Positions 10,762-33,570 of a DNA stretch of 64,000 nucleotides are shown here, one piece after another. The stretch spans positions 62,001-126,000 of the IMG/VR virus record IMGVR_UViG_3300027969_000039, one strand, 5' to 3'. A program made the position numbers and the translations under genes. A model generated the notes under the pieces. That model saw nothing but the letters and a program-made list of their open reading frames with translations, searched no databases and was not told the DNA's origin. Positions within the stretch are counted from its first letter, which is position 1; each line of letters starts with the position of its first letter.

Positions 10762-10778
10762 GATAAAAGTCCAAAGTG

Positions 10779-10785
10779 ATAAATA
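10779..10785 (+). promoter_or_regulatory. T4-late-like promoter
   Basis: GATAAATA upstream of the plus-strand operon 10841-14840. Confidence 0.55.
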
Positions 10786-10793
10786 ATACATAT

Positions 10794-12523: not shown

Positions 12524-13098
12524 AAAAACTACTAACGATACTTGCATTGACCTTCTTTGGTTCTGCATTTGCCGGAGAGATTACAGTATGTGATGGACAG
12601 TATGCATTATGTGCTGCTAGTACTTGCAAACCAACTAACAAAACAATTACTGGTAATAACGGCGTAGCATACCCAGAAGTAGAATGCCGTTGCCCAATAC
12701 TTAAAGGTCGTGCTATCGCTGATACATCAGCAGGTAACATGCAAGGTTCATGTGCTGCAACTGATGATAAACATGTTTGGAGTTTGTTTGCTCCTAAACT
12801 TTACTACCCACAAGAGGCTAGCAATTTTAGCAACAAACCAAAAGATAAAAAAGTAACTATACAAAAGTGTGATGCTAGTTTGAATCTAGGTGCAAAGTCT
12901 AGCAATTGCTTTAGTTGGAATTGTACGATAGGTAGTGATGGTATTGCACTATGCTCATGCCCAACTGGTCAAGTACCGGCAAATACTGCATTTTTAACAG
13001 AAGCAGGTCAAGGTAACCCAGAAGCATGTTCACAATACCCAGTAAGTTTACCAATCAAAGCGCAAGATAAGGCTGAAGCTAAGGAAGCAAAAAAATGA
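12520..13098 (+). CDS. secreted Cys-rich protein with internal duplication
   Basis: Sec signal ending AFA; 12 Cys in two halves, each with C-x4-C and CxCP. Confidence 0.7.
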   Translation: MKKLLTILALTFFGSAFAGEITVCDGQYALCAASTCKPTNKTITGNNGVAYPEVECRCPILKGRAIADTSAGNMQGSCAATDDKHVWSLFAPKLYYPQEASNFSNKPKDKKVTIQKCDASLNLGAKSSNCFSWNCTIGSDGIALCSCPTGQVPANTAFLTEAGQGNPEACSQYPVSLPIKAQDKAEAKEAKK

Positions 13099-14840
13099 AC
13101 TTTAAAGAATTACACGAAGGCGCAGAGCCAAATATGCCTGGTGCCCCTAGTGGCATCAAGATTATGACACCTCAGCAGTTCGTTGCTAGTGCAGGTGATT
13201 CAAAATCTGATGAAGAGGTATCAGAAGGCGGTAATGCATTCATGCCAGGCATACAAAATACGGCAGAATACAAAGCAGGTTTTGCAACAGGCAAGTTACC
13301 AGTTCCATATCCTGAAGGTACACAACAATATGCTAGCTATTACAAAGGAGTGATTGATAAGTCTACCCCTAATTTAAATAAAGGTACAGCAGGAAATTCG
13401 TTGACTGAATTTGCCCCTAGTGATGACGGTGATGATGGATTTAGTGAAGAAACACTAAAAGGTCTTGCAGCGCAATGGTGGAATGGTGATGAAGATCCTC
13501 GTGTAGAAAAATTATTGATGGCTGCAGGTTGGGAGATTGGTCAAGATGATGGGTATGACAACGGTGGTGTGTTTGTGGTGCGAGCCGGTGATGACAGTGG
13601 TCATAGTTATCTCAGTTGGCCAGCAGAAGAACTAAATCCTAATTTATCAGAAACACATTTAAATAGAATTCGTAGCTTATCTGGATTAGTTGAAGCAACT
13701 AAACTACCAGCACAAACTCGTGATTTGGATAGTCAAGAATTTCAAGACTATATGAAGCGTATCGTTGGTACACCTGATTTAGACAAAGAAGGTAATGTTA
13801 AAGTAGATAAAAAAGGTAACGAAAAGTATACTACTGGCAAGACCAAAGGTGACAAATACAAGATGCCTTACATCCATCGTAGTAGTGTAGTTACATACTT
13901 AAGCCCAGATGGTAAAACATATGATGAAGATGCAGTTAAACAAACATTAGCAATTCGTCCTAAATCATTATTAAAGCAAAATGAAAAGATGAAACATAGC
14001 AATGGTGAGTTTGAACAATTCTTCAATGTTGGATTTGCAGCATTAGTAGGAATTGCATTAGATGAACAAACTAATAAATTAATCATTGTTAATACTTGTC
14101 CAGGCGCTGGCTCTTGTAAAGTAGAGTGCTTTGCTATGAAAGGCGGCAAGATTCAATTCAAGGCTGCATGGCAAAGTGACGGAAGAATACTAACATATCT
14201 ATTAAATGATCCTGATGGTTTCTTCAATCAACTAAGTAGTGAAATATCTGCTGAGGCACAAGCAGCAGCAAAGGGTGATAAGAAATTCCCTAATGGTTGG
14301 CAAACAACAGTTCGCTGGCATGATGCTGGTGACTTCTTTAGTCCAGAATATTTAGACATGGCATTGAAGATGGCTGCTAAACATCCTGATGTTAAGTTCT
14401 ATGCTTATACTAAAATGGCTGGAGCAGCATTAGCGGATAAGCCAGACAACTTCATTATCAATTGGAGTGAAGGTGCTAACACTGCACAAGAGAAACAAAT
14501 CAAAGCACAAGATCCTAAGTTAGATAAAACAAAGAACAGTCGCATCGTTCCAGAGAAACTATTCTATGACTTATTGGCTAAGGACGAGAAGGGCAATTTA
14601 GCAAAGACTCCAGATGGTGCATGGCAACCTGCAGGGCCGCAAGAATTACAACAAATGAAACAGCGTATTGCAACAGAATACGGTATTAGTGCTAACTCTA
14701 TTTTGAGTTATACTGAGTACATGGCTAAGAGAAATTCAATCCCAGCTGGAATGAAGTACAATGTTATTGTTGCACCAGGTGAAGGTGATGTTAGTGCTAA
14801 CGACCCAGGCGTACTAAGTACCTTATTGCTAAGACATTAA
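13095..14840 (+). CDS. modular protein with C-terminal Gp88-like (Cys-cluster) domain
   Basis: MNFKELHEG leader; short modules; then CPGAGSCKVECFA, RWHDAGDF and FYAYTK motifs. Confidence 0.65.
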   Translation: MNFKELHEGAEPNMPGAPSGIKIMTPQQFVASAGDSKSDEEVSEGGNAFMPGIQNTAEYKAGFATGKLPVPYPEGTQQYASYYKGVIDKSTPNLNKGTAGNSLTEFAPSDDGDDGFSEETLKGLAAQWWNGDEDPRVEKLLMAAGWEIGQDDGYDNGGVFVVRAGDDSGHSYLSWPAEELNPNLSETHLNRIRSLSGLVEATKLPAQTRDLDSQEFQDYMKRIVGTPDLDKEGNVKVDKKGNEKYTTGKTKGDKYKMPYIHRSSVVTYLSPDGKTYDEDAVKQTLAIRPKSLLKQNEKMKHSNGEFEQFFNVGFAALVGIALDEQTNKLIIVNTCPGAGSCKVECFAMKGGKIQFKAAWQSDGRILTYLLNDPDGFFNQLSSEISAEAQAAAKGDKKFPNGWQTTVRWHDAGDFFSPEYLDMALKMAAKHPDVKFYAYTKMAGAALADKPDNFIINWSEGANTAQEKQIKAQDPKLDKTKNSRIVPEKLFYDLLAKDEKGNLAKTPDGAWQPAGPQELQQMKQRIATEYGISANSILSYTEYMAKRNSIPAGMKYNVIVAPGEGDVSANDPGVLSTLLLRH

Positions 14841-15661
14841 ACTTTAAGTATTTCTTCCAAAGAGTATAACTCTTTCATATAGGGTGACACATTATCTAAT
14901 ACAGATATTGTTAAGTCACCCTTTCTTCTTGGGCCGTGTTTTACATCAAAGTCAGCATCATTGACCTTCTTGTATAGATCAACAATCTGTCTAACTGAAC
15001 GACCTATACCGTGACCTAATGATTCTATTTGATTGCTTGGTTTCTCAATTGCAGTATGTAATGCATCACATATCTCATTAACATGCACATAGTCACGAAT
15101 GCAAGTTCCATCAAATGTATTATAATCTGTACCAAAGATAGTAAACTCACCCTTGTCTTTTGCCTGCATTAAATTGTGCATCAATCCATCTGGATTGGTT
15201 GGCGCAAATCCATCGCTACCAATTACATTGTAGAATCTAAAGATAGTATATGGTGTAGGTCTATGCTGTGTACAATATTCACGCACAACATCTTCTGCGG
15301 CACGTTTACTTATACCATATGCACTAGCACAACCTTCTGCTGCACCAGTACTAGCAAATATAAAGTTCTTTGTTTTTATCTTGTTGATGACATTCATTGT
15401 GCCATTTAAGTTAGTGATGTAATATTGAATAGGAATTTGTTCACTTTCACCTACATTAACTAATGCAGCCAAATGAATTATTGCGTCAAATTCAATTGAT
15501 AAGTCAATTAGTTTGCGTATATCATGTTGATAGAATTCACGCAATCCGTCAGCTTGTGGAATATTGATATCTAGTCCATGCACTTCATACTTGTCAGCTA
15601 ACATCTTAATTAGATGACTACCAATATATCCTGAACAACCTGTTATTAATATTTTTTTCAT
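14837..15661 (-). CDS. NAD-dependent epimerase (GalE-like)
   Basis: GCSGYIG Rossmann motif; YGISK catalytic motif; RDYVHV. Confidence 0.9.
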   Translation of the reverse strand: MKKILITGCSGYIGSHLIKMLADKYEVHGLDINIPQADGLREFYQHDIRKLIDLSIEFDAIIHLAALVNVGESEQIPIQYYITNLNGTMNVINKIKTKNFIFASTGAAEGCASAYGISKRAAEDVVREYCTQHRPTPYTIFRFYNVIGSDGFAPTNPDGLMHNLMQAKDKGEFTIFGTDYNTFDGTCIRDYVHVNEICDALHTAIEKPSNQIESLGHGIGRSVRQIVDLYKKVNDADFDVKHGPRRKGDLTISVLDNVSPYMKELYSLEEILKV

Positions 15662-17016
15662 GTAAATGAAAACAGACTTTCGCCTGTCTCTTCCTCTGTT
15701 GGTTTGTATGTTGGGTCTTTACTTAGATAACTATTATCATCTGTGTATATATTAACAATAAATTTGTAACGGTTAGCCAACACACTTTCAAAATCTTCAC
15801 GGGCTAAATGACTACGATTCAATTCTTTGATATAGTCACGGTAGCATATTGTATCATAATTATTAATCTTTGCTGCATTTGTATTGCTGCGTTTTGCTAC
15901 AAAATCATCTAAGAACTTTATCCAACCTTGTGCAGTATCATCATCTAGTTTTTTGATATAGTCTAATGCACCAGTATTGTAATAGTTGTCAACAATATAT
16001 AACATACTAATTAGATTGCTAGCGTTTGCTAGTTTCTCTTTATAGAAATATTTTTCATCAAAGTTATCAGACCATTCTTGATTGTCTAATACAACGCATG
16101 GCATATGACCAAGACATTCACTAAACGCAAAAGGATAATTTTCACCTAATGCTGGCATAAAGAATACTTTACAACTCTTAATGAAGTCTACCTTTTCTTG
16201 TCCTACAATAGCTACTTTAATTTCATAGTCTGTAATACCTGCTTCACTAAATGCTTTCTCAAACTTCTTAGCACCAGTACTATTAGTCATTACTTTGCAA
16301 GGTAAACCTGTTTCTTTCATTACTTTAATATAAGCGGACGGGTTCTTGCGTTCTTCCCATCGTCCAATAAACAATACACCACTACGAGGTCCATTGTTAG
16401 GTTCAAGCAATTTTCTCTCACTTAATGGCATACGCAATAGTGATACATTCTTTGCACCATACTTAGTCATCTCATCAACATTCTTTTGACTTTGTGTTCC
16501 TACAAAACTATGTGATAGTTCCATATGCTTGTTAAAGAAGTTATGATATTCATCTAAGCATACATCACTAAAGTCTTGTTCATCACGGAACACCATGCTA
16601 TATGAATGAGTATAGAATACAACTGGAATATACTTACCTATTCCCATTGCATAAGCAGCACTCATTGCCTCTTGCGTGTTACACACTAGCATATCATAGA
16701 TATTAGACTCAAAAGCAAGCATGAGACTTTTTCTAAAGTTAACCATCTTTTCAAAATTGATACTATCACTAAATGCAAATGTACCTGTATGATCTGAATA
16801 GCGTATACCAGAATCTGTATATATGATATTTGCACCCAATGACTTAACCAATGTAGCTAAATCGTTTGTTGGTTCTTTATCTAATATGATATCAACTTTC
16901 CAGTTGATACGATCTCCTAGTTCAGTAAATCCCTTAGCAAATTGACCTATACCACCATGTGTTATAAAGTGCTGATCACTAATTAAAAATCCAATACGTT
17001 TATTATATATCCGCAT
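15658..17016 (-). CDS. GT-B (GT4-like) glycosyltransferase
   Basis: GGIGQF, FIGRWEERKNP and ENYPFAFSE (E-x7-E). Confidence 0.8.
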   Translation of the reverse strand: MRIYNKRIGFLISDQHFITHGGIGQFAKGFTELGDRINWKVDIILDKEPTNDLATLVKSLGANIIYTDSGIRYSDHTGTFAFSDSINFEKMVNFRKSLMLAFESNIYDMLVCNTQEAMSAAYAMGIGKYIPVVFYTHSYSMVFRDEQDFSDVCLDEYHNFFNKHMELSHSFVGTQSQKNVDEMTKYGAKNVSLLRMPLSERKLLEPNNGPRSGVLFIGRWEERKNPSAYIKVMKETGLPCKVMTNSTGAKKFEKAFSEAGITDYEIKVAIVGQEKVDFIKSCKVFFMPALGENYPFAFSECLGHMPCVVLDNQEWSDNFDEKYFYKEKLANASNLISMLYIVDNYYNTGALDYIKKLDDDTAQGWIKFLDDFVAKRSNTNAAKINNYDTICYRDYIKELNRSHLAREDFESVLANRYKFIVNIYTDDNSYLSKDPTYKPTEEETGESLFSFT

Positions 17017-17200
17017 TCCATACCTCATCTACAGCCGGGACAGTAATCCATTCAGTTAATTCTTTTCTAATTAGAAATGAACCTGTTCTTGGATTTGTTA
17101 TGCTGTAATCTGTTATTTCACGTTCATAACGATATTGCAATATCTTCTCTGGACCTTCTTCCCAATTGGGTGTAACAAGCCAACGCATCTCAAATTTCAT
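17003..17200 (-). CDS. hypothetical protein
   Basis: 65-aa ORF. Confidence 0.6.
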   Translation of the reverse strand: MKFEMRWLVTPNWEEGPEKILQYRYEREITDYSITNPRTGSFLIRKELTEWITVPAVDEVWNADI

Positions 17201-17442
17201 ATTAAATCCTTTAATCTTGCTATTAAATATTCATCTTTATCGTACCAACGATGTTCATACAACCAATCTGTATCACCTGCTCTGTATCCTGCGGTAATAC
17301 AATATGCATTCTCTAACCACATTGTACGCTTTGTTATATGGCATTGTCTAGGCAATAGGGTAAACTTTAATTTTCTACCCATAATACATTTTTTAAAATG
17401 ATAATCACCGGCTGTTTGTGTAGTCCAATCACTTGAGGGCAT
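17197..17442 (-). CDS. hypothetical protein
   Basis: 81-aa ORF. Confidence 0.6.
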   Translation of the reverse strand: MPSSDWTTQTAGDYHFKKCIMGRKLKFTLLPRQCHITKRTMWLENAYCITAGYRAGDTDWLYEHRWYDKDEYLIARLKDLI

Positions 17443-17537
17443 TATTCTCTATCCACTCTAGCATTTACATTAGCACGATGTGCCATATAGAATACCGCTA
17501 CTATGTATCCAAGTAAGAATCCCCAGAAGAATGTCAT
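17442..17537 (-). CDS. 31-aa membrane peptide (not in ORF track)
   Basis: MTFFWGFLLGYIVAVFYMAHRANVNARVDRE* fills the gap exactly. Confidence 0.5.
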   Translation of the reverse strand: MTFFWGFLLGYIVAVFYMAHRANVNARVDRE

Positions 17538-18380
17538 TTAAGTGCCCCATTCGTTTTTGAATAACGGCACTTGTAGTCTATCACTGTACCGCCATCCTTT
17601 TCGCATTGCCATTTCTGCAACCGCCCTATTATTAAGATTGTACACCCGCTCAACGCCACCACAAGGCATAAGATAGACATGACCACGAAAACCCCTCTTA
17701 CGATACGCATTTACTGCCTCCTCAGCTTCTTCCATATCCTCGTTAGTAGCTACTACAAATTTGAGATATGTATGCCCAACTTGGCTATATTCATAGATTA
17801 TGTCTGGGCAGATAGCATCATCCCACTTCTCACCACTGATGCTGAGTTTAGGACTGACGCTGAATGTGATAGAACCCATGCTACGACTTGTACACCATTT
17901 ATTCAAGAAGAATCGTAGATCCTGATGTAATGATTGTGTACCATTAGTCTCAAAAGTTAGTTCTTGTAAGCTACGCATCTTCTCGTTTGAAAGTAAATCA
18001 ACAAAACTACGCTGCCAACCTAGTAGTGGCTCACCACCAGTGATGACAAGATGCTCATCTAACCAACGCTTCTCTGGCAACATATCCATGATACTACTAA
18101 CAATACTATCAGTTTCAAGCATTGGACTTAAGTCTTTGAATCTGGGATCCCAACTCGCATAGCTATCACATCCTGTACTGACAAGTGGTAACATTTTGTA
18201 ATCAGTATACTTTGTCGGGTCGATATTATTTGCTTCCTCGCTTAGTTTACCTTTCGGCATACCAAAGCCTGCACATTTGAAGTTACATCCGAATGTTCGT
18301 AGAAATACTGAGGGGACACCCATGTATCTACCTTCACCTTGAATGCTATAGAATAGTTCTGCTATTTTTAATTTTGCCAT
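17538..18380 (-). CDS. queE: 7-carboxy-7-deazaguanine synthase (radical SAM)
   Basis: ELFYSIQGEG, VFLRTFGCNFKC, ITGGEP, ETNGT, SVSPK and RLQVPL motifs. Confidence 0.9.
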   Translation of the reverse strand: MAKLKIAELFYSIQGEGRYMGVPSVFLRTFGCNFKCAGFGMPKGKLSEEANNIDPTKYTDYKMLPLVSTGCDSYASWDPRFKDLSPMLETDSIVSSIMDMLPEKRWLDEHLVITGGEPLLGWQRSFVDLLSNEKMRSLQELTFETNGTQSLHQDLRFFLNKWCTSRSMGSITFSVSPKLSISGEKWDDAICPDIIYEYSQVGHTYLKFVVATNEDMEEAEEAVNAYRKRGFRGHVYLMPCGGVERVYNLNNRAVAEMAMRKGWRYSDRLQVPLFKNEWGT

Positions 18381-18383
18381 GTT

Positions 18384-19481
18384 TTATTGCCTGAATGAAT
18401 TTATGTCACCTAAATATACTTTTTTGTTTTTAAAAATATCATCTTTTAATATTTCTTTTAGTAAAATTTTATCTTCTGCGTTTAAATTTAATCTATCGTA
18501 CATAATGTTATCTAAATGTCCCCACTGCCGTATACTATTAAAATATATACCTGTCAAGTTTTCATATGATAATTGCCAATTAATATAGTCTTTAATTTCT
18601 TTATAATTACCTTTTTGGACAGTAAAAGAAGTACTCCAGCCAATAAAATTTTTAAAACTGTTACTTATAATCATTTCATTAAGAAATTTTAAATTTTCAT
18701 CTAATTTATCTTTAGATCCATTTATTCTTATCTTTGAATAAGTTTCATTTGAAAATGCATCGATACTTACTGTAATATGTGTGATATTATTCCATAATGG
18801 TTTTATTTGATTCCAGCGTGATTCTGTCATTAAAATACCGTTGGTCATTAGTTTTATTGTTAAATTTTCATTTAGATTTTTTGTTGACAATGTTTTTAAG
18901 TAATTCCAATAAGTAGGACTTGCAAAAGCATCTCCACTACCAGTAATGTTTATACTAACCTTTTCACCTTGTTCTAATAAATAATCAACAAGTTTTTCAA
19001 CTTTGTCATTGATATTATCTATTTGTTTATTTTCTCCCAATTTATGAAGTATTAAATTATTACGACAACTAGGACATTGCAAATTACATGATAAATCATA
19101 ACAAAAATGAATTATGATTGAATTAGAATTTTTATAAAAATCTAATAATTGCAAAGGTACAATTGTATTACCAGGCATTACTTTATCATTTAACATTTGA
19201 CTAATAAAAGGACAATAGTCATTGCAGTTTGTGAATTTACCCTCACTCATATCTGATATCATAGCTAGTCGTTCTGAATTATTAATGATATCTTCTATTG
19301 AATCTGTAATAATATTGCCGCAAAATTTTGGTAACCAAGAAAAACAACATATAGTAATATCACCATTGTGGTGAATTTCTAAATGTTTTGATATTTTATA
19401 ACAGCCGAAATTTTTTAAATATTCCTGTGTTCTTGCATACTCATTTTCTGATTTCATTAAAAAATTCATGTTATGATTCAA
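18384..19481 (-). CDS. radical SAM protein with N-terminal SPASM/Twitch-like domain
   Basis: CNLQCPSC (Cx3Cx2C), GSGDAF, MTNG; N-terminal GDITICC; markedly AT-rich. Confidence 0.8.
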   Translation of the reverse strand: MNHNMNFLMKSENEYARTQEYLKNFGCYKISKHLEIHHNGDITICCFSWLPKFCGNIITDSIEDIINNSERLAMISDMSEGKFTNCNDYCPFISQMLNDKVMPGNTIVPLQLLDFYKNSNSIIIHFCYDLSCNLQCPSCRNNLILHKLGENKQIDNINDKVEKLVDYLLEQGEKVSINITGSGDAFASPTYWNYLKTLSTKNLNENLTIKLMTNGILMTESRWNQIKPLWNNITHITVSIDAFSNETYSKIRINGSKDKLDENLKFLNEMIISNSFKNFIGWSTSFTVQKGNYKEIKDYINWQLSYENLTGIYFNSIRQWGHLDNIMYDRLNLNAEDKILLKEILKDDIFKNKKVYLGDINSFRQ

Positions 19482-19960
19482 TCTTTAAATTCATTATCTT
19501 CTCTGTGTCCTTGACGACCTGCCATGTTTGAATCAGTCTCACGTACTTCTACTTTACAGCACCAAACACGTTTGGCTTCTTCACTGCCGCAGTTGGGTAA
19601 GAAGATAGTGTTCACATATTCATATAAGAAATCACTGATACCTTCACATCCTGTCTTTTCAACCTCTGTAATTTTTGCTAGTTTAAGTTTACCTAGATTC
19701 AATAGATGTTCACGCATCGGGTCATCTTGTGCGACTAGTAATGTATGATCGAACCATTCTTCTAATTTTTCTTTGAGTGGTTTCAAGCCACCAAAGTCAG
19801 TCACCCAGTTTCGTGCATCTAATGTATCCGCTTCAAATTCAAAATGAAACGACATTGCGTAACCATGAATCATGTTACAATGACTATCTGCACGCCATTG
19901 ACGATAAGCTACTGGACCTATCTGTTTGTACGTTTTTGTACTGAAATATTTTTTTGCCAT
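19478..19960 (-). CDS. queD: 6-carboxy-5,6,7,8-tetrahydropterin synthase
   Basis: HCNMIHGY, DFGGLK, FDHT, GCE and VRET motifs. Confidence 0.85.
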   Translation of the reverse strand: MAKKYFSTKTYKQIGPVAYRQWRADSHCNMIHGYAMSFHFEFEADTLDARNWVTDFGGLKPLKEKLEEWFDHTLLVAQDDPMREHLLNLGKLKLAKITEVEKTGCEGISDFLYEYVNTIFLPNCGSEEAKRVWCCKVEVRETDSNMAGRQGHREDNEFKD

Positions 19961-19968
19961 GTTGTTCT

Positions 19969-20042
19969 CCTATGTTAATTATAGCATAGGCAGCAGAATT
20001 TGTAAAGCGGGATGATGACCGAAGACCGCTATCTTTATTTAT
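19969..20042 (-). promoter_or_regulatory. late promoter plus structured 5' UTR of queD
   Basis: ATAAATA (20042-20036); AGCGG/CCGCU stem with a cUUCGg-like loop; CCUAUG/CAUAGG hairpin overlapping the RBS. Confidence 0.45.
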
Positions 20043-20496
20043 CCTTTGATTCAGCTTGTACTACACGCTTACGCAAACTACTGCTACTGAAACTATGGTC
20101 ACGGCTATTGAATACTAATTCAATCTTACGCTTCTCGCAGATTGCTCTACCAGTAAAGTCTTTCTCCATGTACTCAACCCCTAGTATACGCACATCTACT
20201 GGCAATGTCAACAGTATGTCTTCCAAATCTTTTTCTGTATTGTAAACAACAATTTCATCTACAAAACGGACAGCACTTAAACTGATTTGGCGTTCAACAA
20301 TACTTTGAATGGGAGCATTCTTATCTGGTCTATCCCATTGTGCATTATTTTGTAACCCAGCAATGAGGTAATCGCAATGATTCTTAGCTTCACTAAGCAT
20401 TGCGATATGTCCTGCATGTAATATATCAAATTGCGAGAACACGATACCTATCTTTAGGCCTTGTAATTTTAGTTCTTTGATACGGTTGAATATCAT
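20035..20496 (-). CDS. cytidylyltransferase (TagD/RfaE-like)
   Basis: FDILHAGHI (HxGH), LIAGL, ER..L.AVRFVDE and SSSSLR motifs. Confidence 0.85.
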   Translation of the reverse strand: MIFNRIKELKLQGLKIGIVFSQFDILHAGHIAMLSEAKNHCDYLIAGLQNNAQWDRPDKNAPIQSIVERQISLSAVRFVDEIVVYNTEKDLEDILLTLPVDVRILGVEYMEKDFTGRAICEKRKIELVFNSRDHSFSSSSLRKRVVQAESKDK

Positions 20497-20765
20497 TCTT
20501 CAACTCCAAAAAAGTGTTCTTTAATTGCTACATAACTGTCAACACCACATTGAACATAACCATCCCAATGTGTGTCCTTCATCATAAGTTCATCTTCCAG
20601 CACAGGCAGATATTGTTCTCTTACTTGATTCATACATTCAGCTATAATCAATTCAGCAAGATTTTCTAAGTTTTGTTTGTCATCATCATGCCCGTATAAG
20701 CTAGACCGTTTTAATGCCCAATCAAATCCAGCCTGTTCAGCAAGTTGTTGAATTCGTTCGTTCAT
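20493..20765 (-). CDS. MNERI-family small protein, dispersed copy
   Basis: MNERIQQLAEQAG...ENLAELIIAEC...IKEHFFGVEE. Confidence 0.8.
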   Translation of the reverse strand: MNERIQQLAEQAGFDWALKRSSLYGHDDDKQNLENLAELIIAECMNQVREQYLPVLEDELMMKDTHWDGYVQCGVDSYVAIKEHFFGVEE

Positions 20766-21445
20766 TTCCCACCCCGAGCCAATTGATAGAATTCTGCTCT
20801 TGCTGCTGGATCACTTTTGAATCCACCACCTAATTTACTTGTAACAGTACTAGAGCCAGTATCTTCTACACCTCTTGATTTAACACAATAATGTTGTGCA
20901 TCAATCATGACCGCAACATCTTCTGTCTCAAGGATATATTGCAATGCGTGAAAGATTTGTTCTGTCAATCGTTCTTGTATTTGTGGACGCTTGCTAAAGT
21001 ATTCTACGATACGATTGATTTTACTCAATCCAAGTACTTTCTGATTGGGAACGTATGCCACAGTTGCTAGTCCATCGATGACTACAAAGTGATGTTCGCA
21101 ATTGCTTTGTACATTGATATTGCGTTCGCATACCATTTCGTTGTACTTCATCTTGTTATCAACTGCTGTACATTTAGGAAATGCCTCATAATCTAATCCC
21201 CAAAAGATTTCATTGACATACATCTTTGCTACACGTTTTGGGGTGTCAATCAGACTATCATCTGTTAAGTCAAGACCTAATGCTGTCATAATATCAGCAA
21301 ATAATACTTCAATGACTTCAATCTTGCCTTTACGGTCGATGATTTGACCTGTCTCTTTGATAGGAGTTTCAACTCCCATCTTAACCAAATGTTCGTGTAC
21401 TTTTTGACCCAACTCTGGATCTGTTTTTGTTTTATTATAACTCAT
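20762..21445 (-). CDS. folE: GTP cyclohydrolase I
   Basis: TPKRVAK, SNCEHH, GLSKINR, QIQERLT and HYCVKSRG motifs. Confidence 0.95.
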   Translation of the reverse strand: MSYNKTKTDPELGQKVHEHLVKMGVETPIKETGQIIDRKGKIEVIEVLFADIMTALGLDLTDDSLIDTPKRVAKMYVNEIFWGLDYEAFPKCTAVDNKMKYNEMVCERNINVQSNCEHHFVVIDGLATVAYVPNQKVLGLSKINRIVEYFSKRPQIQERLTEQIFHALQYILETEDVAVMIDAQHYCVKSRGVEDTGSSTVTSKLGGGFKSDPAARAEFYQLARGGK

Positions 21446-21480
21446 AGATAACCTTCCTTTGTGATGGTTTTTGTTTTGAA

Positions 21481-21518
21481 ATGTAAGCTACCGTTGTGTA
21501 GCTTACATATTTATTTAT
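21481..21518 (-). promoter_or_regulatory. tandem late promoter and 11-bp hairpin upstream of folE
   Basis: ATAAATAAATA (21518-21508) followed by the ATGTAAGCTAC-N6-GTAGCTTACAT inverted repeat (21481-21508). Confidence 0.55.
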
Positions 21519-21524
21519 CACAGA

Positions 21525-21713
21525 TTAAGCCTTAGCTTCTTTTCTTGCTGCTTTTTCAGCGGTGATTTCATTACGGCGAGCCTTGACTGCTTTAGCTAGT
21601 TCACCCAATGCTTTACGGGCACGAGTTCCTGCTGCTGCATTACCTTTTTCAAATTTTTCATGTTCGGCTTCGTATGCTGCCAATTGTGTTTTAATATCAT
21701 TATGTGCGTTCAT
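21525..21713 (-). CDS. histone H1-like (Hc1-type) small basic protein
   Basis: KFEKGNAAAGTRARKALGEL motif. Confidence 0.75.
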   Translation of the reverse strand: MNAHNDIKTQLAAYEAEHEKFEKGNAAAGTRARKALGELAKAVKARRNEITAEKAARKEAKA

Positions 21714-21738
21714 TTTATTTCCTTTTTAAAATTTTTTT

Positions 21739-22122
21739 TTATTCGTCAAGTCTGGTGATTTCTAAATCACAATCAATAATCATTTCGCATTCGTCTTGAC
21801 TCCAGCCGTGTTCTTCTAAGTCAAGCCAAGAATTACCTTCTTCAAAGAATTCTTCTATCCAAGCTGTAGTTTCTTCATCACAGTCATCTGTGTCAACTTC
21901 TTCCCAGCAACCATCGCTAGTTTCAACTAGTTCAGCTTCATATCCGCAGTCGTACATATCTACTCCTGCTTCAATATCAGGGGGATTATCATCTTCTGTT
22001 TCTACAGTAAATTCTCCCCAACGCCATCCTGTTTCAACCATGACCTTATTACCATCTTTAGTAAGATAGTTACGTTCAATGATTGATTTCTTCCATGTTG
22101 GTTTTACACTCCATATTGCCAT
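21739..22122 (-). CDS. hypothetical acidic protein
   Basis: 127-aa ORF with an AAAGGA RBS. Confidence 0.7.
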   Translation of the reverse strand: MAIWSVKPTWKKSIIERNYLTKDGNKVMVETGWRWGEFTVETEDDNPPDIEAGVDMYDCGYEAELVETSDGCWEEVDTDDCDEETTAWIEEFFEEGNSWLDLEEHGWSQDECEMIIDCDLEITRLDE

Positions 22123-22123
22123 T

Positions 22124-23299
22124 TTAATATTTCCTTTCTTTAGTGTGTTTTCTGTAATCAGTACTCATGCGTAGCATATCATCGCCCTTGCCCTCTAATA
22201 TATCACAGATTCTATCAATCGTGCTATCGTTACGGTCACTTATCTTTCCCATGTTCTTATGAGGCTCTTGTAGAAGCCTACGTAACTTACCAATAGCATT
22301 ATCAATGCTCCAAGGGATATACAAACGGTCAGGATCGTTAGCGAAAGTTTCAGGGAAGCTACGATAAGCAGGATAGAGAACATTGCATCCGAGTGCATCA
22401 GCCTCACTGACTGTGTTCGAAACCCAATCTTGTAACGCACAGTTAAATACAACCCGACTATCATTAACAATGTTGTAGTATTCATTCTTTTCTAAATCCT
22501 CATGTATTGTCAATAGTCCACGACTCACCAAGTCGCGGGTTCGTTGCATATAGCTGTCGCTATTAGATTTAAGTTTACCCCCGCTACACACGCAGAATTT
22601 AATATCAGTGTCTGGGTTTTCAGTGTACCATTGTTCAATGAGGTCCATATAGAAATCAGGTTGTTTCTCCTGATCCCAACGGGCACTGAATACTACACGA
22701 TTCTTTCGTTCATTAAATGGCTTGATACTAGCGACACGACCTTGTACTTCACTCTTGCCAAATGCTAATCCACTGATATTGTAGATTGGAGCACGCCAAC
22801 CTGCAATCTTCATATGCATTACCATTTCTTCATTAGTTGCTAGTACACCGTCTACGAACGAATCAACCATCTTTTCATAATGCCCCATAAATTCTGACAT
22901 ATTCCAAACATGTACAAAATCATCAGGATCAATAGACTGGGCAAGACAGCGAACAAAAATACGAGGACGGTGCTCACTACTGATTTGATTGAGTATATAA
23001 GGTAGGCTCTCAATACCGGGCTGAAACATGTCCTCAAAGTAGATAACATCTTCATTGTTCAGTTCTCCTGCTTTCATCATCTTGATTAGATTCATCAGTT
23101 GACTCATACCGTAGTATGTGCGACCATGTGCATCTAATACTTGACCCGTTACTATTGCTTGGTCATTACTAAGTGTTTCCCCGGGTACTACAACATAGTT
23201 GATACCTCTAAGATCAAACACCGTAGTATTCCACTCTTGCAATTGCAGAGTGTACCTTGCTTTGTAGGGCTCAAGCCCCATGTAATATAGCTTACGCAT
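22124..23299 (-). CDS. GT-B glycosyltransferase
   Basis: VVFSARWDQEKQP, VVFNCALQDW.S..V.EA..LG, YPAYRSFPE; start MRKLYY at 23299. Confidence 0.75.
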   Translation of the reverse strand: MRKLYYMGLEPYKARYTLQLQEWNTTVFDLRGINYVVVPGETLSNDQAIVTGQVLDAHGRTYYGMSQLMNLIKMMKAGELNNEDVIYFEDMFQPGIESLPYILNQISSEHRPRIFVRCLAQSIDPDDFVHVWNMSEFMGHYEKMVDSFVDGVLATNEEMVMHMKIAGWRAPIYNISGLAFGKSEVQGRVASIKPFNERKNRVVFSARWDQEKQPDFYMDLIEQWYTENPDTDIKFCVCSGGKLKSNSDSYMQRTRDLVSRGLLTIHEDLEKNEYYNIVNDSRVVFNCALQDWVSNTVSEADALGCNVLYPAYRSFPETFANDPDRLYIPWSIDNAIGKLRRLLQEPHKNMGKISDRNDSTIDRICDILEGKGDDMLRMSTDYRKHTKERKY

Positions 23300-23505
23300 T
23301 ATGGACGAGCGTTTTCTTGCCACTGATCTCTCGCAACTTTTCCAGTTGCGAATTTTGTATACTGACGATAGACATAACTACGTTGGTCGTAGAGTTCTGC
23401 TTCGTTGTACTTATAACCAAAATCCACGCAGAATTCTAGATATTTCTCTAGGTCCTCAAAGATTTGTTGAACACGTGGGTTTGATTGAAAAGTTTGTTTT
23501 GCCAT
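23299..23505 (-). CDS. hypothetical protein
   Basis: 68-aa ORF with RBS. Confidence 0.65.
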   Translation of the reverse strand: MAKQTFQSNPRVQQIFEDLEKYLEFCVDFGYKYNEAELYDQRSYVYRQYTKFATGKVARDQWQENARP

Positions 23506-23514
23506 TTTATTTCC

Positions 23515-23967
23515 TTAGATAGCGAGGTTAGTTAAAGGTTTAGTTACATTATAAAAAATCGTAGCACCATTCTCATTGTCCTCTGAGACAGTGATAGTGA
23601 TATTACGATCTGGATACCGAGTTGCAATAACCTCATAAAGATCATCACTAATCATTTCACAACTTTTGTAATACAATGCAAGAATGCCTTGAGAATATTG
23701 ATTCTCTAACCATCGTTTGAATTGAATAAACTCAATATCACGGTCGTTGTGAAATACTTCAATCGTCACCTCAAAGTGAAAGATGTGACGATGTGGAGTT
23801 GCTAAAAAGCTAACATCATACTCATCACCTGTTGCCAAGTTAGGGTCTGTTGCTGCTGCGGGGTATTTATGAATACCTTCTTTTTGAAAACGTACAAAAA
23901 TTGTACGCATTGCTTTATCTTTAATTCGTTGACGTTTTTCAGCCAATACTTGCGTTTGTTGTTCCAT
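23515..23967 (-). CDS. QueD-like T-fold protein (DpdL-like candidate)
   Basis: PHRHIFHFEV, EFIQFKRWL, SCEMI and VSEDNENGA parallel the QueD layout; two genes from dpdA-like. Confidence 0.6.
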   Translation of the reverse strand: MEQQTQVLAEKRQRIKDKAMRTIFVRFQKEGIHKYPAAATDPNLATGDEYDVSFLATPHRHIFHFEVTIEVFHNDRDIEFIQFKRWLENQYSQGILALYYKSCEMISDDLYEVIATRYPDRNITITVSEDNENGATIFYNVTKPLTNLAI

Positions 23968-24176
23968 TATCTATCATCCTCAAAATTAACTCGTTCATGG
24001 TCTTCATCCCATTGAAGTCTTGTATATCTTCTTAACTCTAAGTATACATCAAGCCTATCTATTTTCATATCTTTAAGGGCATCTACAGTAAAGTCTTTAT
24101 CCTGTTCTGCTGCTAGTATTTTAGCATCAAGGTCCTTGAGTTGTTGTTCTAATCTTGCAATTCGTTGTCTATACAT
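23967..24176 (-). CDS. hypothetical coiled-coil protein
   Basis: 69-aa ORF. Confidence 0.6.
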   Translation of the reverse strand: MYRQRIARLEQQLKDLDAKILAAEQDKDFTVDALKDMKIDRLDVYLELRRYTRLQWDEDHERVNFEDDR

Positions 24177-24180
24177 ATTA

Positions 24181-25776
24181 TTACTCCAAAACTAATGACA
24201 TAGCGTCATCGCTATCTTCTATTTCCTCAATTGGTTCTTCATCTACAGTAAACAATTCATTAAACATAGTCATAGCATTAACTGTTTTTTTACCACTAAT
24301 ACCTTGGCTACCTGATTGGAATTGTTTCCAATAACTACTATGATAGTCAATCAACTCCCATGCTTCATCTTTAGTTTTCTTTGAAAAGATTTCATCAACT
24401 AATGTAGTGAAGAATCTATCACCTTCAAACTTATGAACAATCATCTTAGGAATCACACCTTGTTCATATTGCCGATTAGCCTCTTGAACTGCATTCATAT
24501 GCATCCAAACATTGTGACTTTGAATCAATGTGTAACTCAATGTATCCCAACTTGTTTTAGTTTCTTTGCCATGTTGTCCTAAGAATCCTACCCCACGATA
24601 ACACATATCTTTGAGTGTAAGTAAATCAGTTACTGGACTATCCGTAAATGTTTTATGTATTCCTTCAGCTAACACCGCATCACGAAACTTGCGAGTATCA
24701 CTAGCATATGATTTCTTCTCGGCAGTCTTTTCCATTTGATAAGACCACTTCTTATTATGTTGAATAGTTGTATTAAAATATGCCAATCCTTTAGCTGCAC
24801 TATAAAATGGACTTGCACAGTCAAAAGTAATTTGAAGTTTAGGATTATGATATTTACGAATAGCTTTTTGAATATCAGTAAACAATACTGCATATTCTAA
24901 TATACTTGTACCCAAACAATGTACTAAATCATGCTTATCTTCACGCAATAACCCGTCGTGAATTATTTCAGTCAATCTACGCAATGTCAAATGAATGTCA
25001 ATTTTATTTTGTCCACCGAACGCCCATCCGTTAAAATGATTATCTGGATAGATATTTGGGTCACAGTATTTTTTCATTTCAGTATACCATGTATCGCTGG
25101 CTGTATGATTACGACCCTGCAACACATTTAAAAACTTGCATTTCCCTGAGCGATTTTTTATAAAATATTCATTATTGATATGAGTAGCTGTTATAGCTTC
25201 TTCAACATTTTTGATACCATGCAGACTTTTTCCAGTACCTGGAATAGTGTTACCATCACTATCTTTTTCTACTGTCTTAGGGTCTTTCATATGAAAAGTA
25301 AGTTCAGACTGACTTGGTATATCTAAACACATACCATAGTCCATGTATGTGTCCATCCATGTTAATACTGCTTTGCGTTTTTTCATAGCACGAGGACAGT
25401 TAGGATCCTTCCAGTCTGCGGGCCATTGACCTTTTAAAATTTGAAAGCCACCACTGTCACCCAACATGAATGTACCTTGCTCACGCTCACGTATGATACT
25501 CTCATTGTTATCGTTCACAGTGGTATCTAAGTTAGCATGACCGGCAGAGTATAGTCCCCACTTGTAATAGTAAAGACCTTCTTTGCTGTTTAAGAAGTTT
25601 AATTTCTCAACATCGCCCTTGAACCCTGCAGGGATGCGAGCCTGATCAAAGTATGGTTCACCCTTGCGTTGCTTACCCAAACCAGCAATATAGAAACTGC
25701 TGACTGCGGGTAAGAACAATGCCCATTCAGGGTCTTGTTTTAGTGATAGATTATCCTGGACCATATGGTAAATCAT
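24181..25776 (-). CDS. dpdA: DpdA/TGT-like 7-deazaguanine transglycosylase
   Basis: GDSGGFQ, MCLDIP, NVLQG, GWAFGG, HCLGT and FDCASP motifs; context of folE/queD/queE. Confidence 0.8.
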   Translation of the reverse strand: MIYHMVQDNLSLKQDPEWALFLPAVSSFYIAGLGKQRKGEPYFDQARIPAGFKGDVEKLNFLNSKEGLYYYKWGLYSAGHANLDTTVNDNNESIIREREQGTFMLGDSGGFQILKGQWPADWKDPNCPRAMKKRKAVLTWMDTYMDYGMCLDIPSQSELTFHMKDPKTVEKDSDGNTIPGTGKSLHGIKNVEEAITATHINNEYFIKNRSGKCKFLNVLQGRNHTASDTWYTEMKKYCDPNIYPDNHFNGWAFGGQNKIDIHLTLRRLTEIIHDGLLREDKHDLVHCLGTSILEYAVLFTDIQKAIRKYHNPKLQITFDCASPFYSAAKGLAYFNTTIQHNKKWSYQMEKTAEKKSYASDTRKFRDAVLAEGIHKTFTDSPVTDLLTLKDMCYRGVGFLGQHGKETKTSWDTLSYTLIQSHNVWMHMNAVQEANRQYEQGVIPKMIVHKFEGDRFFTTLVDEIFSKKTKDEAWELIDYHSSYWKQFQSGSQGISGKKTVNAMTMFNELFTVDEEPIEEIEDSDDAMSLVLE

Positions 25777-29931: not shown

Positions 29932-29960
29932 AGTATACATGCCTTGTGTAGAAAAGTCAA
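29932..29960 (-). promoter_or_regulatory. sigma70-type promoter
   Basis: TTGACT-N17-TATACT. Confidence 0.7.
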
Positions 29961-33538: not shown

Positions 33539-33546
33539 AAGAGTGA

Positions 33547-33562
33547 TTAAATATATATTTAA
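33547..33562. promoter_or_regulatory. palindromic divergent late promoter
   Basis: perfect palindrome TTAAATATATATTTAA with TAAATA on both strands, each 17 nt from an ATG. Confidence 0.6.
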
Positions 33563-33570
33563 CAGCATTT

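What the first reader, a model, noticed from the sequence alone, without database searches (positions are those of the whole stretch)
14837..23299. Sugar-transfer enzymes interleaved with deazaguanine genes: possible new hypermodified base
Seen: a GalE-like epimerase, a GT4-like transferase, a TagD-like cytidylyltransferase and a second GT-B gene are co-oriented with and interspersed among queE, queD, folE and dpdA. Inference: a glycosylated or polyol-phosphate-decorated 7-deazaguanine. The alternative is decoration of host surface or virion proteins.
Basis: inference. Interest (0 to 1): 0.6.

Follow-up and report, generated by a model that had tools for sequence, protein, structure and literature searches.

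The report
Sugar-linked deazaguanine DNA modification cluster
A freshwater jumbo phage has genes to make 7-deazaguanine and insert it into DNA, tightly joined to sugar-transfer enzymes in a pairing that recurs in unrelated phages. This suggests, without proving, a sugar-decorated guanine substitute not described in the papers searched.

Summary
On the minus strand, 14837-23299 holds a GalE-like epimerase, a GT4 glycosyltransferase, QueE, QueD, a TagD-like nucleotidyltransferase, FolE and a second GT-B gene, many with overlapping stop and start codons. No dpdA lies inside these coordinates. The unnamed gene at 18384-19481 is a second radical-SAM enzyme.

The module runs further upstream. Gene 23515-23967 is DpdL, the proposed 7-carboxy-7-deazaguanine decarboxylase. 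Gene 24181-25776 is a divergent TGT/DpdA-like transglycosylase that HMMER-level searches miss and profile-profile comparison finds. There is no QueC, so the predicted base is 7-deazaguanine (dDG type, as in Cellulophaga phage phiST).

The main new result is a conserved pairing. The 391-aa GT-B family lies within about 3 kb of DpdL in 18 of its 23 cultured-phage records, in different gene orders and with two different DpdA types. In 80 related metagenomic loci it is part of the conserved core. GT4, epimerase, nucleotidyltransferase and other sugar-tailoring genes vary between relatives.

Best reading: a glycosylated 7-deazaguanine in DNA, with a lineage-variable glycan. This rests on genomic inference only. 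No chemistry was available, and the acceptor atom is unknown.

The parts
24181..25776 (-). 531-aa divergent TGT/DpdA-like DNA transglycosylase (outside the finding's coordinates)
   Evidence: DSGGFQ at 107, LDIP at 151, VLQG at 218, GWAFGG at 250, HCLG at 286 and FDCAS at 318. hhalign of a 57-member family profile: 97.7%, E 2e-12 against the DpdA2 family (includes VH7D gp012); 89%, E 2e-6 against E. coli Tgt, with the three catalytic Asp aligned (earlier). ESM-Atlas feature neighbours are TGT and DpdA clusters. Homologues sit in the same position in PA5oct (gp168) and Vibrio phage 2.275.O. Pfam, PADLOC and PDB HMM searches find nothing.
23967..24176 (-). 69-aa ORF, function unknown
   Evidence: No family hit. 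Weakly conserved in relatives.
23515..23967 (-). DpdL, a QueD-paralogous T-fold protein and the proposed CDG decarboxylase (outside the finding's coordinates)
   Evidence: 36% identical to phiST DpdL (CGPG_00067) and 57% to ACP17 gp125. Carries LATPHRHIFHF, matching the DpdL signature LxxxHRHxF (signature from PMC10516641). phrog_17812 at 5e-31.
23299..23505 (-). 68-aa ORF between DpdL and GT-B, conserved across the clade
   Evidence: Found in nearly all 80 related loci at 35-97% identity. No family hit.
22124..23299 (-). 391-aa GT-B glycosyltransferase, the conserved partner of DpdL
   Evidence: AF2 pLDDT 69, GT-B fold: PimA Z 18.9, T4 alpha-glucosyltransferase (AGT) Z 17.0, Foldseek OtsA 2e-10. 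ACP17 gp124 is the second BFVD hit. Invariant D291-x7-E299. 62% identical to the BUCT-ZZ01 388-aa protein. More than 7,900 metagenomic homologues; those listed are 83-99% identical.
21739..22122 (-). 127-aa acidic ORF, function unknown
   Evidence: No family hit. pI 4.05. Patchy in relatives.
21525..21713 (-). 62-aa Hc1 histone-H1-like DNA-binding protein
   Evidence: PF07432 at 1.5e-14. Present in most close relatives.
20762..21445 (-). FolE, GTP cyclohydrolase I
   Evidence: PF01227 at 6e-62; NF006824 scores 322 bits, above its cut-off.
20493..20765 (-). 90-aa ORF, start and stop overlapping FolE and the nucleotidyltransferase
   Evidence: 4-nt overlaps on both sides. No family hit.
20035..20496 (-). 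153-aa TagD/RfaE-II-like nucleotidyltransferase (phospho-alcohol or sugar-1-phosphate activation)
   Evidence: PF01467 at 5e-10. RfaE domain II 63 bits and TagD 50 bits, both under their cut-offs. Nearest solved proteins: ECT 3elb 6e-13 and TagD 1coz 2e-10. HAGH at 27.
19478..19960 (-). QueD, 6-carboxytetrahydropterin synthase
   Evidence: phrog_2389 at 2e-41; PF01242 at 8e-16. 71% identical to ACP17 QueD. Motif CNMIHGY.
18384..19481 (-). 365-aa radical-SAM enzyme with an N-terminal SPASM/twitch domain (not dpdA); role unknown
   Evidence: PF04055 at 2e-10, PF13186 at 4e-8, NF033640 at 6e-13. CNLQCPSC at 132. Seen in only a few relatives.
17538..18380 (-). QueE, 7-carboxy-7-deazaguanine synthase
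   Evidence: phrog_2076 at 1e-50; several QueE TIGRFAMs under their cut-offs. 44% identical to BUCT-ZZ01 QueE.
17003..17442 (-). Two small ORFs (81 and 65 aa) upstream of GT4
   Evidence: No family hits. Overlapping junctions.
15658..17028 (-). 456-aa GT4-type glycosyltransferase (variable accessory)
   Evidence: AF2 pLDDT 82; BshA, MshA, PimA and HepE at Foldseek 1e-11 to 1e-10. Invariant E296-x7-E304. 43% identical to the in-cluster BUCT-ZZ01 homologue. Relatives carry two types, about 70% and about 43% identical.
14837..15661 (-). 274-aa GalE-like NAD-dependent sugar-nucleotide epimerase (variable accessory)
   Evidence: PF01370 at 5e-33. TIGR01179 scores 164 bits, under its cut-off of 262. 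GalE structures at 2e-32. GxxGxxG and YGISK present.

Best explanation
The stretch of about 14837-25776 is one DNA-modification module with four proposed steps.
1. FolE, QueD and QueE make 7-carboxy-7-deazaguanine. This follows from solid family assignments.
2. DpdL, with no QueC present, converts it to 7-deazaguanine. This is inferred by homology to phiST, where dDG replaces G; the DpdL reaction itself has never been shown in vitro.
3. The 531-aa TGT-superfamily protein exchanges guanine in phage DNA for the deazapurine. This is inferred from remote homology and conserved catalytic Asp residues.
4. The 391-aa GT-B enzyme transfers a sugar from a nucleotide-sugar onto the deazapurine, before or after insertion. 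This is inferred from gene linkage only, and the acceptor atom is unknown. My speculation is the electron-rich C7 that decarboxylation frees, which would put the sugar in the major groove.

In this phage the GT4 enzyme, the GalE-like epimerase, the TagD-like nucleotidyltransferase and perhaps the second radical-SAM enzyme then extend or vary the adduct (second sugar, epimer, polyol- or aminoalcohol-phosphate). The likely benefit is protection of the genome from restriction and other DNA-targeting defences. The variable tailoring set fits an arms race.
For: The pathway genes are identified. DpdL homology and signature. The record shows no QueC above Pfam's cut-off (two 17-bit hits). The DpdA-like call for the 531-aa protein rests.

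GT-B/DpdL linkage in cultured phages:
- The GT-B family occurs in 23 records and DpdL in 28. Eighteen records have both, 0-2.8 kb apart.
- Gene orders differ. ACP17: DpdA2, GT-B, DpdL. X1: GT-B, DpdA2, DpdL. BUCT-ZZ01: DpdA2, DpdL, GT-B. PA5oct: DpdA(531-type), GT-B, DpdL. Phosso: DpdL, GT-B.
- The pair is kept with two different DpdA types.

In 80 IMG/VR loci of the window's own clade, GT-B is part of the invariant core with pol, DpdA, DpdL, FolE, QueD and QueE. The nucleotidyltransferase, GT4, epimerase, radical-SAM and methyltransferase genes come and go. A second subclade carries a GDP-mannose-dehydratase-like SDR and a DegT aminotransferase fragment at the same place.

Both GTs keep the (E/D)x7E motif as invariant residues. 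The sugar genes and the deazaguanine genes have overlapping stop and start codons.

From the literature: PA5oct virion DNA resists G-containing restriction enzymes, and the adduct is not identified (PMC12191111). DpdL plus DpdA from ACP17 gave no dDG in E. coli, and the authors noted that other enzymes may be required (PMC10516641).
Against: There are no chemical data for any GT-B-bearing phage. 7-deazaguanine has no hydroxyl or amine side chain to glycosylate, so the chemistry would be unusual: a C-glycoside, or N2/O6. GT4-like (E/D)x7E enzymes are retaining O-glycosyltransferases as far as I know.

The DpdL+DpdA expression also failed for phiST, which has no GT-B, so that failure does not point to the GT.

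The fold does not tell a DNA GT from a lipid or small-molecule GT: T4 AGT Z 17.0, PimA 18.9, pterin glucosyltransferase 17.4. Both GTs are acidic (pI 5.4 and 5.6).

The module may move between phages as a block (QueD is 71% identical to ACP17's), so the lineages are not fully independent. A more distant branch of the GT family (about 25% identity, PhiXhv-15) sits with GlmS and a BshB-like deacetylase and no deazaguanine genes. GT4, the epimerase and the nucleotidyltransferase are absent from ACP17, PA5oct and Phosso.
Confidence: 0.45

Rival explanations
1. The phage makes plain 2'-deoxy-7-deazaguanosine (dDG) DNA, as phiST does. The glycosyltransferases, epimerase and nucleotidyltransferase serve another target, such as virion protein glycosylation, host envelope remodelling or another nucleic-acid adduct. 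They sit here only because this is the early and nucleotide-metabolism region.
For: phiST reaches about 100% dDG with FolE, QueD, QueE, DpdL and DpdA3 and has no GT-B. The accessory sugar genes are variable and missing in several DpdL/GT-B phages. X1's GT4 homologue lies 40 kb from its deazaguanine cluster. A distant branch of the GT family has a non-deazaguanine context. Phage GT4, epimerase and nucleotidyltransferase sets for surface glycans are common (my own knowledge).
Against: It does not explain why the 391-aa GT-B family is nearly confined to DpdL phages and stays within 0-2.8 kb of DpdL through several rearrangements and two DpdA types. It does not explain why GT-B is core in all 80 related loci, or why its stop and start codons overlap or abut its neighbours'.
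Confidence: 0.3
2. The GT-B enzyme acts on a free small molecule, a pterin or deazapurine intermediate. It would make a pterin glycoside or a glycosylated deazapurine metabolite or nucleoside, not a DNA base. Cyanobacterial tetrahydrobiopterin glucosyltransferase and the N-glycosylated preQ0 antibiotics work this way.
For: FolE plus a PTPS-family enzyme is also the start of pterin synthesis. Pterin glucosyltransferases of Synechococcus PCC 7942 and Pseudanabaena appear among the structural matches (5zer Z 17.4; 9v0l). BUCT-ZZ01, which infects PCC 7942, has the closest cultured GT-B homologue (62%) and a phosphoribosyltransferase next to QueE.
Against: QueE, DpdL and a TGT-like transglycosylase are core to every instance, and they point to base exchange in a nucleic acid. 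PA5oct DNA is G-modified. The structural similarity to pterin GTs is no better than to dozens of other GT4 enzymes. A free glycosylated base could still be the substrate that DpdA inserts, which would merge this rival with the best explanation.
Confidence: 0.12
3. The GT-B protein is a non-glycosylating accessory of the transglycosylase or of DpdL. It might be a DNA-binding or base-flipping partner, or act in the CDG-to-DG step, rather than add a sugar.
For: Bacterial DpdA needs a partner, DpdB (PMC10516641 introduction). DpdL+DpdA alone failed in E. coli. The GT-B protein is unusually conserved, with a mean column identity of 85% in the sampled alignment.
Against: The donor-site D-x7-E motif and many C-terminal-domain residues are invariant, as expected of an active GT. 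phiST manages without it. No GT-B protein is known to me to act as a pure scaffold.
Confidence: 0.08

Closest known systems
dDG system of Cellulophaga phage phiST (FolE, QueD, QueE, DpdL, DpdA3; Hutinet et al. 2023, PMC10516641)
   Same: FolE, QueD and QueE without QueC, plus a DpdL with the LxxxHRHxF signature and a TGT-superfamily transglycosylase, placed next to the DNA polymerase region.
   Different: phiST has no GT-B, GT4, epimerase or nucleotidyltransferase. Its transglycosylase is the 259-aa DpdA3. The 531-aa protein here is only weakly related to it (hhalign 59%).
Deazaguanine clusters of Acidovorax phage ACP17, the Pseudomonas jumbo phages PA5oct and MIJ3, Xanthomonas phages X1 and BUDD, Sinorhizobium phage Phosso and Synechococcus phage BUCT-ZZ01
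   Same: All have the DpdL and GT-B pair beside FolE, QueD, QueE and a DpdA. PA5oct shares the order pol, 243-aa protein, 531-type DpdA, GT-B/DpdL. BUCT-ZZ01 also has the GT4 gene in its cluster.
   Different: ACP17, X1 and BUCT-ZZ01 use a DpdA2-type enzyme. Most lack the epimerase, the nucleotidyltransferase and the second radical-SAM gene. BUCT-ZZ01 adds a phosphoribosyltransferase. The DNA adduct has not been identified for any of them: PA5oct has restriction resistance only, and ACP17 was predicted to carry dDG.
T-even phage glucosyl-hydroxymethylcytosine (GT-B DNA glucosyltransferases AGT and BGT)
   Same: It works like this: a base changed by phage enzymes, then sugar added by GT-B enzymes from host UDP-sugar, with lineage-variable second sugars. 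T4 AGT is a good structural match (Z 17.0).
   Different: There is no detectable sequence similarity. The target here would be a purine analogue placed by base exchange, not a pyrimidine made at nucleotide level. The record has one thymidylate-synthase-family gene, which scores like ThyA (354 bits), so no hmC route is evident.
Mannosyl- and galactosyl-queuosine in eukaryotic tRNA; N-glycosylated preQ0 natural products such as huimycin and dapiramicin (my own knowledge, not tested here)
   Same: These are precedents for sugars on 7-deazaguanine derivatives.
   Different: There the sugar goes on the cyclopentenediol of queuosine or on the exocyclic N2 of a free nucleobase. The targets are tRNA or small molecules, not DNA. 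The pathways need QueC-derived preQ0, which this phage cannot make by itself.

Membership tests
Phage 7-deazaguanine DNA modification system (Dpd type) | FolE, QueD and QueE for CDG synthesis | tested here: met
   FolE 322 bits, above its cut-off. QueD phrog_2389 2e-41 with a CxxxHGY motif. QueE phrog_2076 1e-50, though the QueE TIGRFAMs score under their cut-offs.
Phage 7-deazaguanine DNA modification system (Dpd type) | A DpdA/TGT-superfamily transglycosylase | tested here: met
   Met only by profile-profile comparison and motifs. The 531-aa family scores 97.7%, E 2e-12 against DpdA2 and 89%, E 2e-6 against E. coli Tgt, with DSGGFQ, LD and FDC Asp residues invariant. Pfam TGT and DpdA, PADLOC and PDB HMM searches find nothing. 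It lies at 24181-25776, outside the finding.
Phage 7-deazaguanine DNA modification system (Dpd type) | QueC (preQ0 synthase) for preQ0-derived bases | tested here: not met
   PF06508 gives only two 17-bit hits, under its cut-off, in the 303-kb record. The record is about 86% complete. A TilS-like PP-loop protein at 29957-30565 is not QueC.
Phage 7-deazaguanine DNA modification system (Dpd type) | Modified deoxynucleoside actually present in virion DNA | not testable with these tools
   The public runs that hold this phage are kept only as assembled contigs. There are no raw or nanopore reads.
DpdL (proposed CDG decarboxylase) | QueD-like T-fold with LxxxHRHxF in place of CxxxHGH, in a QueC-less cluster | tested here: met
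   LATPHRHIFHF at 55-65. 36% identical to phiST DpdL and 57% to ACP17 gp125.
GT4 / GT-B nucleotide-sugar glycosyltransferases | Two-Rossmann-domain GT-B fold | tested here: met
   456-aa protein: Foldseek 1e-11 to BshA and MshA. 391-aa protein: Z 18.9 to PimA, Foldseek 2e-10 to OtsA. The 391-aa model is of only moderate quality (pLDDT 69).
GT4 / GT-B nucleotide-sugar glycosyltransferases | Ex7E donor-site motif | tested here: met
   456-aa protein: E296-x7-E304, invariant. 391-aa protein: the variant D291-x7-E299, invariant.
GT4 / GT-B nucleotide-sugar glycosyltransferases | Pfam Glycos_transf_1 above its gathering score | tested here: not met
   16.3 and 15.9 bits against a cut-off of 26.4. 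Glyco_trans_1_2 scores 22.6 against 25.
DNA glucosyltransferases of T-even phages (AGT/BGT) | Sequence membership, and a hydroxymethyl-pyrimidine acceptor pathway in the genome | tested here: not met
   No sequence match. The structural Z of 17.0 to AGT is no better than to other GT-B enzymes. The single thymidylate-synthase-family gene scores like ThyA.
TagD (glycerol-3-phosphate cytidylyltransferase) / RfaE domain II | HxGH nucleotidyltransferase fold and an equivalog-level score | tested here: inconclusive
   HAGH is present and PF01467 is met. TagD scores 50 bits (cut-off 165) and RfaE-II 63 bits (cut-off 182). The best solved match is ethanolamine-phosphate cytidylyltransferase. The substrate is not assignable.
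GalE (UDP-glucose 4-epimerase) | SDR with GxxGxxG and YxxxK, and an equivalog-level score | tested here: inconclusive
   The motifs are present and GalE structures are the best hits (2e-32). TIGR01179 scores 164 bits, under its cut-off of 262, and the protein is about 60 residues shorter than GalE.

The most novel reading that the evidence does not exclude
A widespread clade of freshwater jumbo phages, and unrelated cultured phages that carry the DpdL and GT-B pair (PA5oct, ACP17, X1, Phosso, BUCT-ZZ01), replace guanine with a glycosylated 7-deazaguanine. The first sugar would be put on by a dedicated GT-B enzyme, possibly as a C7 C-glycoside made possible by DpdL decarboxylation. Swappable tailoring genes would then diversify it. 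To my knowledge this would be the first sugar-bearing purine analogue in any natural DNA.
Probability: 0.4. Interest if true: 0.85.

Novelty: new variant of a known kind. Interest (0 to 1): 0.66.

Why it matters
Every natural DNA glycosylation known to me is on a pyrimidine (hmC, hmU or base J). Every known deazaguanine DNA adduct is a small C7 substituent. A glycosylated deazapurine would be a new class of DNA hypermodification, with consequences for restriction, CRISPR, DNA-glycosylase and END-nuclease defences and for sequencing and DNA technology.

The question can be tested at once, because several cultured phages carry the same gene pair. They include the phage-therapy candidate PA5oct, whose G-modification is known to exist but has not been identified.

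The work also shows that a large DpdA-like family (894 clusters at 50% identity) is missed by Pfam, NCBIfam, PADLOC and PDB HMM searches. Surveys of deazaguanine systems based on those libraries would therefore undercount them.

Tried and rejected
DpdA searches that found nothing:
- Pfam TGT (PF01702) and DpdA (PF23859) over the whole 303-kb record.
- An HMM built from four DpdA2 proteins with all filters off, over the six-frame translation.
- BLAST with phiST DpdA3.
- Pfam and PADLOC at E 10 on the 531-aa family and on bona fide phage DpdA2 and DpdA3 proteins. These libraries do not see the phage enzymes either.
- PDB profile searches with three alignments.
- A Pfam scan of 57 diverse family members.
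Only hhalign, motifs and language-model features made the link.

Other dead ends:
- A phosphoribosyltransferase, which would allow a nucleotide-level route as BUCT-ZZ01 might use, is absent here.
- Reading the 391-aa protein as DpdA3 was rejected: the fold is GT-B, and ACP17's DpdA is the neighbouring gp123.
- PDB sequence searches for both GTs gave nothing useful.
- A read-level test for G miscalls was not possible. All holders are Logan contigs of freshwater metagenomes.
- Contexts of three distant 531-family members were too short to be informative.
- The supplementary tables of Hutinet 2023 are not held, so the published subfamily of ACP17's and PA5oct's DpdA could not be checked.
- One literature search on 'DpdL' alone returned mostly unrelated papers.
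- No paper in the library describes a glycosylated deazaguanine in DNA.

No complex-prediction job was sent, because no binding claim is made.

Full report
**Setting.** The window is bases 62001-126000 of a 303-kb IMG/VR phage record, estimated about 86% complete. Its family-B DNA polymerase is 43-49% identical to those of Rak2-, Atu_ph07- and CBB-like jumbo myoviruses and Vibrio phage 2.275.O. Near-identical sequence occurs in freshwater, lake and river metagenomes from many studies. These are held only as assembled contigs.

**Checking the observation.** Thirteen co-oriented minus-strand ORFs fill 14837-23299. Family scans, structure models and motifs confirm these seven:
- A GalE-like SDR epimerase at 14837-15661.
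- A GT4 glycosyltransferase at 15658-17028. Pfam is weak, but the AF2 model (pLDDT 82) matches BshA, MshA and PimA, and an invariant Ex7E is present.
- QueE at 17538-18380.
- QueD at 19478-19960.
- A TagD/RfaE-II-like nucleotidyltransferase at 20035-20496.
- FolE at 20762-21445.
- A second GT-B protein at 22124-23299 (391 aa from the ATG used by its homologues). AF2 pLDDT 69; PimA Z 18.9; invariant D-x7-E.

These rest. Stop and start codons overlap by 4 nt at FolE/p90/nucleotidyltransferase, at QueD/radical-SAM and at p81/p65/GT4/epimerase. The sugar genes are therefore physically interleaved with the deazaguanine genes and probably co-translated with them.

One claimed gene is absent from these coordinates: dpdA.

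**Extending the module.** Synechococcus phage BUCT-ZZ01 has homologues of QueE, QueD, FolE and both GT genes, with the 391-aa protein 62% identical. It also has two further conserved genes.

The first corresponds to the window's 150-aa ORF at 23515-23967. It is 36% identical to DpdL of Cellulophaga phage phiST and 57% to ACP17 gp125, and it carries the published DpdL signature LxxxHRHxF as LATPHRHIFHF. DpdL is the proposed 7-carboxy-7-deazaguanine decarboxylase of phages that have FolE, QueD and QueE but no QueC. phiST DNA has essentially all G replaced by 2'-deoxy-7-deazaguanosine (PMC10516641). This record likewise has no QueC above Pfam's cut-off.

The second is BUCT-ZZ01's 416-aa DpdA2-type transglycosylase. 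It is homologous to ACP17 gp123 and to gp012 of Vibrio phage VH7D, the phage whose DpdA2 was tested in that paper. It has no counterpart in this record, even with an unfiltered HMM.

**A hidden DpdA.** The 531-aa ORF at 24181-25776 lies between the polymerase region and DpdL. It has homologues at the same position in PA5oct (gp168, 38%) and Vibrio phage 2.275.O. It carries DSGGFQ, LDIP, VLQG, GWAFGG, HCLG and FDCAS.
- A first hhalign against DpdA2 proteins gave 86-91% probability.
- The exhaustive representative search found 894 clusters for this family. Of 105 full-length top hits, 100 keep DSGGxQ.
- A 57-member profile of the family scores 97.7%, E 2e-12 against the DpdA2 family. Against E. 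coli Tgt it scores 89%, E 2e-6 over 181 columns, with the three catalytic or substrate Asp positions aligned and invariant.
- ESM-Atlas feature neighbours are viral TGT-like and bacterial DpdA clusters.
- HMMER-level resources (Pfam TGT and DpdA, NCBIfam, PADLOC, PDB) find nothing. They also miss bona fide phage DpdA2 and DpdA3.
- Iyer et al. 2021 had already listed a deazaguanine synthesis and incorporation system in PA5oct (PMC7824862), which is consistent.

Its relation to DpdA3 is unresolved (59%).

**The key result: GT-B travels with DpdL.** Two different queries against 50,697 phage records found the same 23 records for the GT-B family. DpdL occurs in 28 records. Eighteen records have both, with the two genes 0-2.8 kb apart:
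- ACP17: order DpdA2, GT-B, DpdL, QueE.
- X1 and BUDD: order GT-B, DpdA2, DpdL, QueE.
- BUCT-ZZ01: order GT4, DpdA2, DpdL, GT-B.
- The eleven PA5oct-like jumbo phage records: order 531-type DpdA, GT-B, DpdL.
- Phosso: DpdL overlaps GT-B by 4 nt.
- BCSR5.

The pair persists through changes of gene order and with two different transglycosylase types. That argues for selection on the pair itself, not mere inheritance.

DpdL occurs without the GT in the phiST group, MA9V-3, RHph_I1_18, Bakedbeans, Ahp1 and D479. The five GT records without DpdL are a distant branch (about 25% identity) that sits with GlmS and a BshB-like deacetylase.

In 80 IMG/VR loci of the window's own clade, pol, p243, the 531-aa DpdA, DpdL, p68, GT-B, FolE, QueD and QueE form a conserved core. 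The nucleotidyltransferase, two types of GT4, the epimerase, the second radical-SAM gene and a methyltransferase come and go. A second subclade carries a GDP-mannose-dehydratase-like SDR, a DegT aminotransferase fragment, another radical-SAM gene and a methyltransferase at the equivalent place. Outside the clade, GT4 is in-cluster only in BUCT-ZZ01. ACP17, PA5oct and Phosso lack it, and PA5oct has a short SDR-like ORF in its cluster.

**Interpretation.** Shown or well founded:
- A CDG pathway without QueC.
- A DpdL.
- A TGT-superfamily enzyme.
- Two apparently catalytically intact GT-B enzymes.
- A conserved DpdL and GT-B gene pair.

Inferred:
- The base is 7-deazaguanine and is exchanged into DNA.
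- The GT-B enzyme glycosylates it.
- In this phage GT4, the epimerase and the nucleotidyltransferase elaborate the adduct.

External hints fit. [quoted passage not shown] DpdL plus DpdA from ACP17 did not yield dDG in E. coli.

The weak point is chemistry. 7-deazaguanine offers no obvious O- or N-acceptor in the major groove. My suggestion of attack by the electron-rich C7 that decarboxylation frees is speculation. The fold cannot tell a DNA GT from other GT4-like enzymes: T4 AGT Z 17.0, PimA 18.9, pterin glucosyltransferase 17.4.

The main rival is plain dDG with the sugar enzymes serving another target. It explains the variable accessories well, but it explains the GT-B and DpdL pairing poorly.

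**Novelty.** Deazaguanine systems, DpdL and the PA5oct system are known. Three searches of the held literature, and the full text of Hutinet 2023, gave no mention of glycosyltransferases linked to DpdL or DpdA, or of a glycosylated deazaguanine in DNA. I rate this a new variant of a known kind, resting on genomic inference. It can be tested directly in cultured phages.

**Limits.** Both structure-prediction jobs went to the two GTs, so the 531-aa protein was not folded. Read laying was not used, because no raw reads exist for this phage.

Noticed in passing
window 18384-19481 (-): A radical-SAM enzyme with an N-terminal SPASM/twitch domain (NF033640 type) overlaps QueD by 4 nt. Only a few relatives have it, at about 50% identity. 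A 29%-identical one sits beside a methyltransferase next to the polymerase in another subclade (L075). Its role is unknown; it may tailor the sugar or the base.
   Followed up: partly
window 21525-21713 (-): A 62-aa Hc1 (chlamydial histone-H1-like) DNA-binding protein gene lies inside the modification cluster. It is conserved in most close relatives.
   Followed up: partly
window 29957-30565 (-): A 202-aa stand-alone PP-loop ATPase of the TilS type (PF01171, 2.5e-35) lies just upstream of the DNA polymerase gene. The PA5oct-like phage MIJ3 is also reported to encode TilS. It is not QueC, but it belongs to the same ATP-pyrophosphatase superfamily, so a QueC-like amidation role cannot be excluded.
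   Followed up: partly
window 10841-14840 (+): Three plus-strand genes (560 aa with DUF6321, 192 aa, 581 aa with a GP88 domain) interrupt the minus-strand array between UvdE and the epimerase, and GC and AT skew are reversed there. In relative L087 the epimerase abuts UvdE directly, so this looks like an inserted island.
   Followed up: partly
window 32582-33568 (-): A TctC-family tripartite tricarboxylate transporter substrate-binding protein (PF03401, 2e-26) is encoded by the phage. This is an unusual auxiliary gene.
   Followed up: no
window 9736-10791 (-) and 34101-34913 (-): A UvdE UV-damage endonuclease and a non-specific DNA/RNA endonuclease (Endonuclease_NS) flank the region. If the phage's own DNA is modified, the nuclease could degrade host DNA selectively.
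   Followed up: no
L003 13303-13764 (-) (Synechococcus phage BUCT-ZZ01, ON615601): A xanthine-guanine phosphoribosyltransferase-like gene (PF00156, 3e-13) sits between QueE and QueD in the BUCT-ZZ01 cluster. It hints at a nucleotide-level route for the deazapurine in that phage, alongside DpdA.
   Followed up: partly
window 24181-25776 (-) family; P0361-P0510: The 531-aa DpdA-like family has 894 clusters at 50% identity, and Pfam, NCBIfam, PADLOC and PDB HMM searches all fail to detect it. One member (L100) lies in a bacterial contig next to an integrase, so the family is not confined to jumbo phages.
   Followed up: partly
L098 5618-8852 (+) (Xanthomonas phage PhiXhv-15, PV764602): A distant member of the GT-B family sits with GlmS and a BshB-like N-acetylglucosaminyl deacetylase. 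This could be a different glucosamine-based modification pathway in about 227-kb Xanthomonas and Erwinia phages.
   Followed up: no
L097 9382-9915 (+) (Sinorhizobium phage Phosso, PV764938): Phosso has a 177-aa ORF annotated 'glycosylase' directly upstream of its DpdL and GT-B genes, where other phages have DpdA. Whether it is a minimal transglycosylase was not examined.
   Followed up: no
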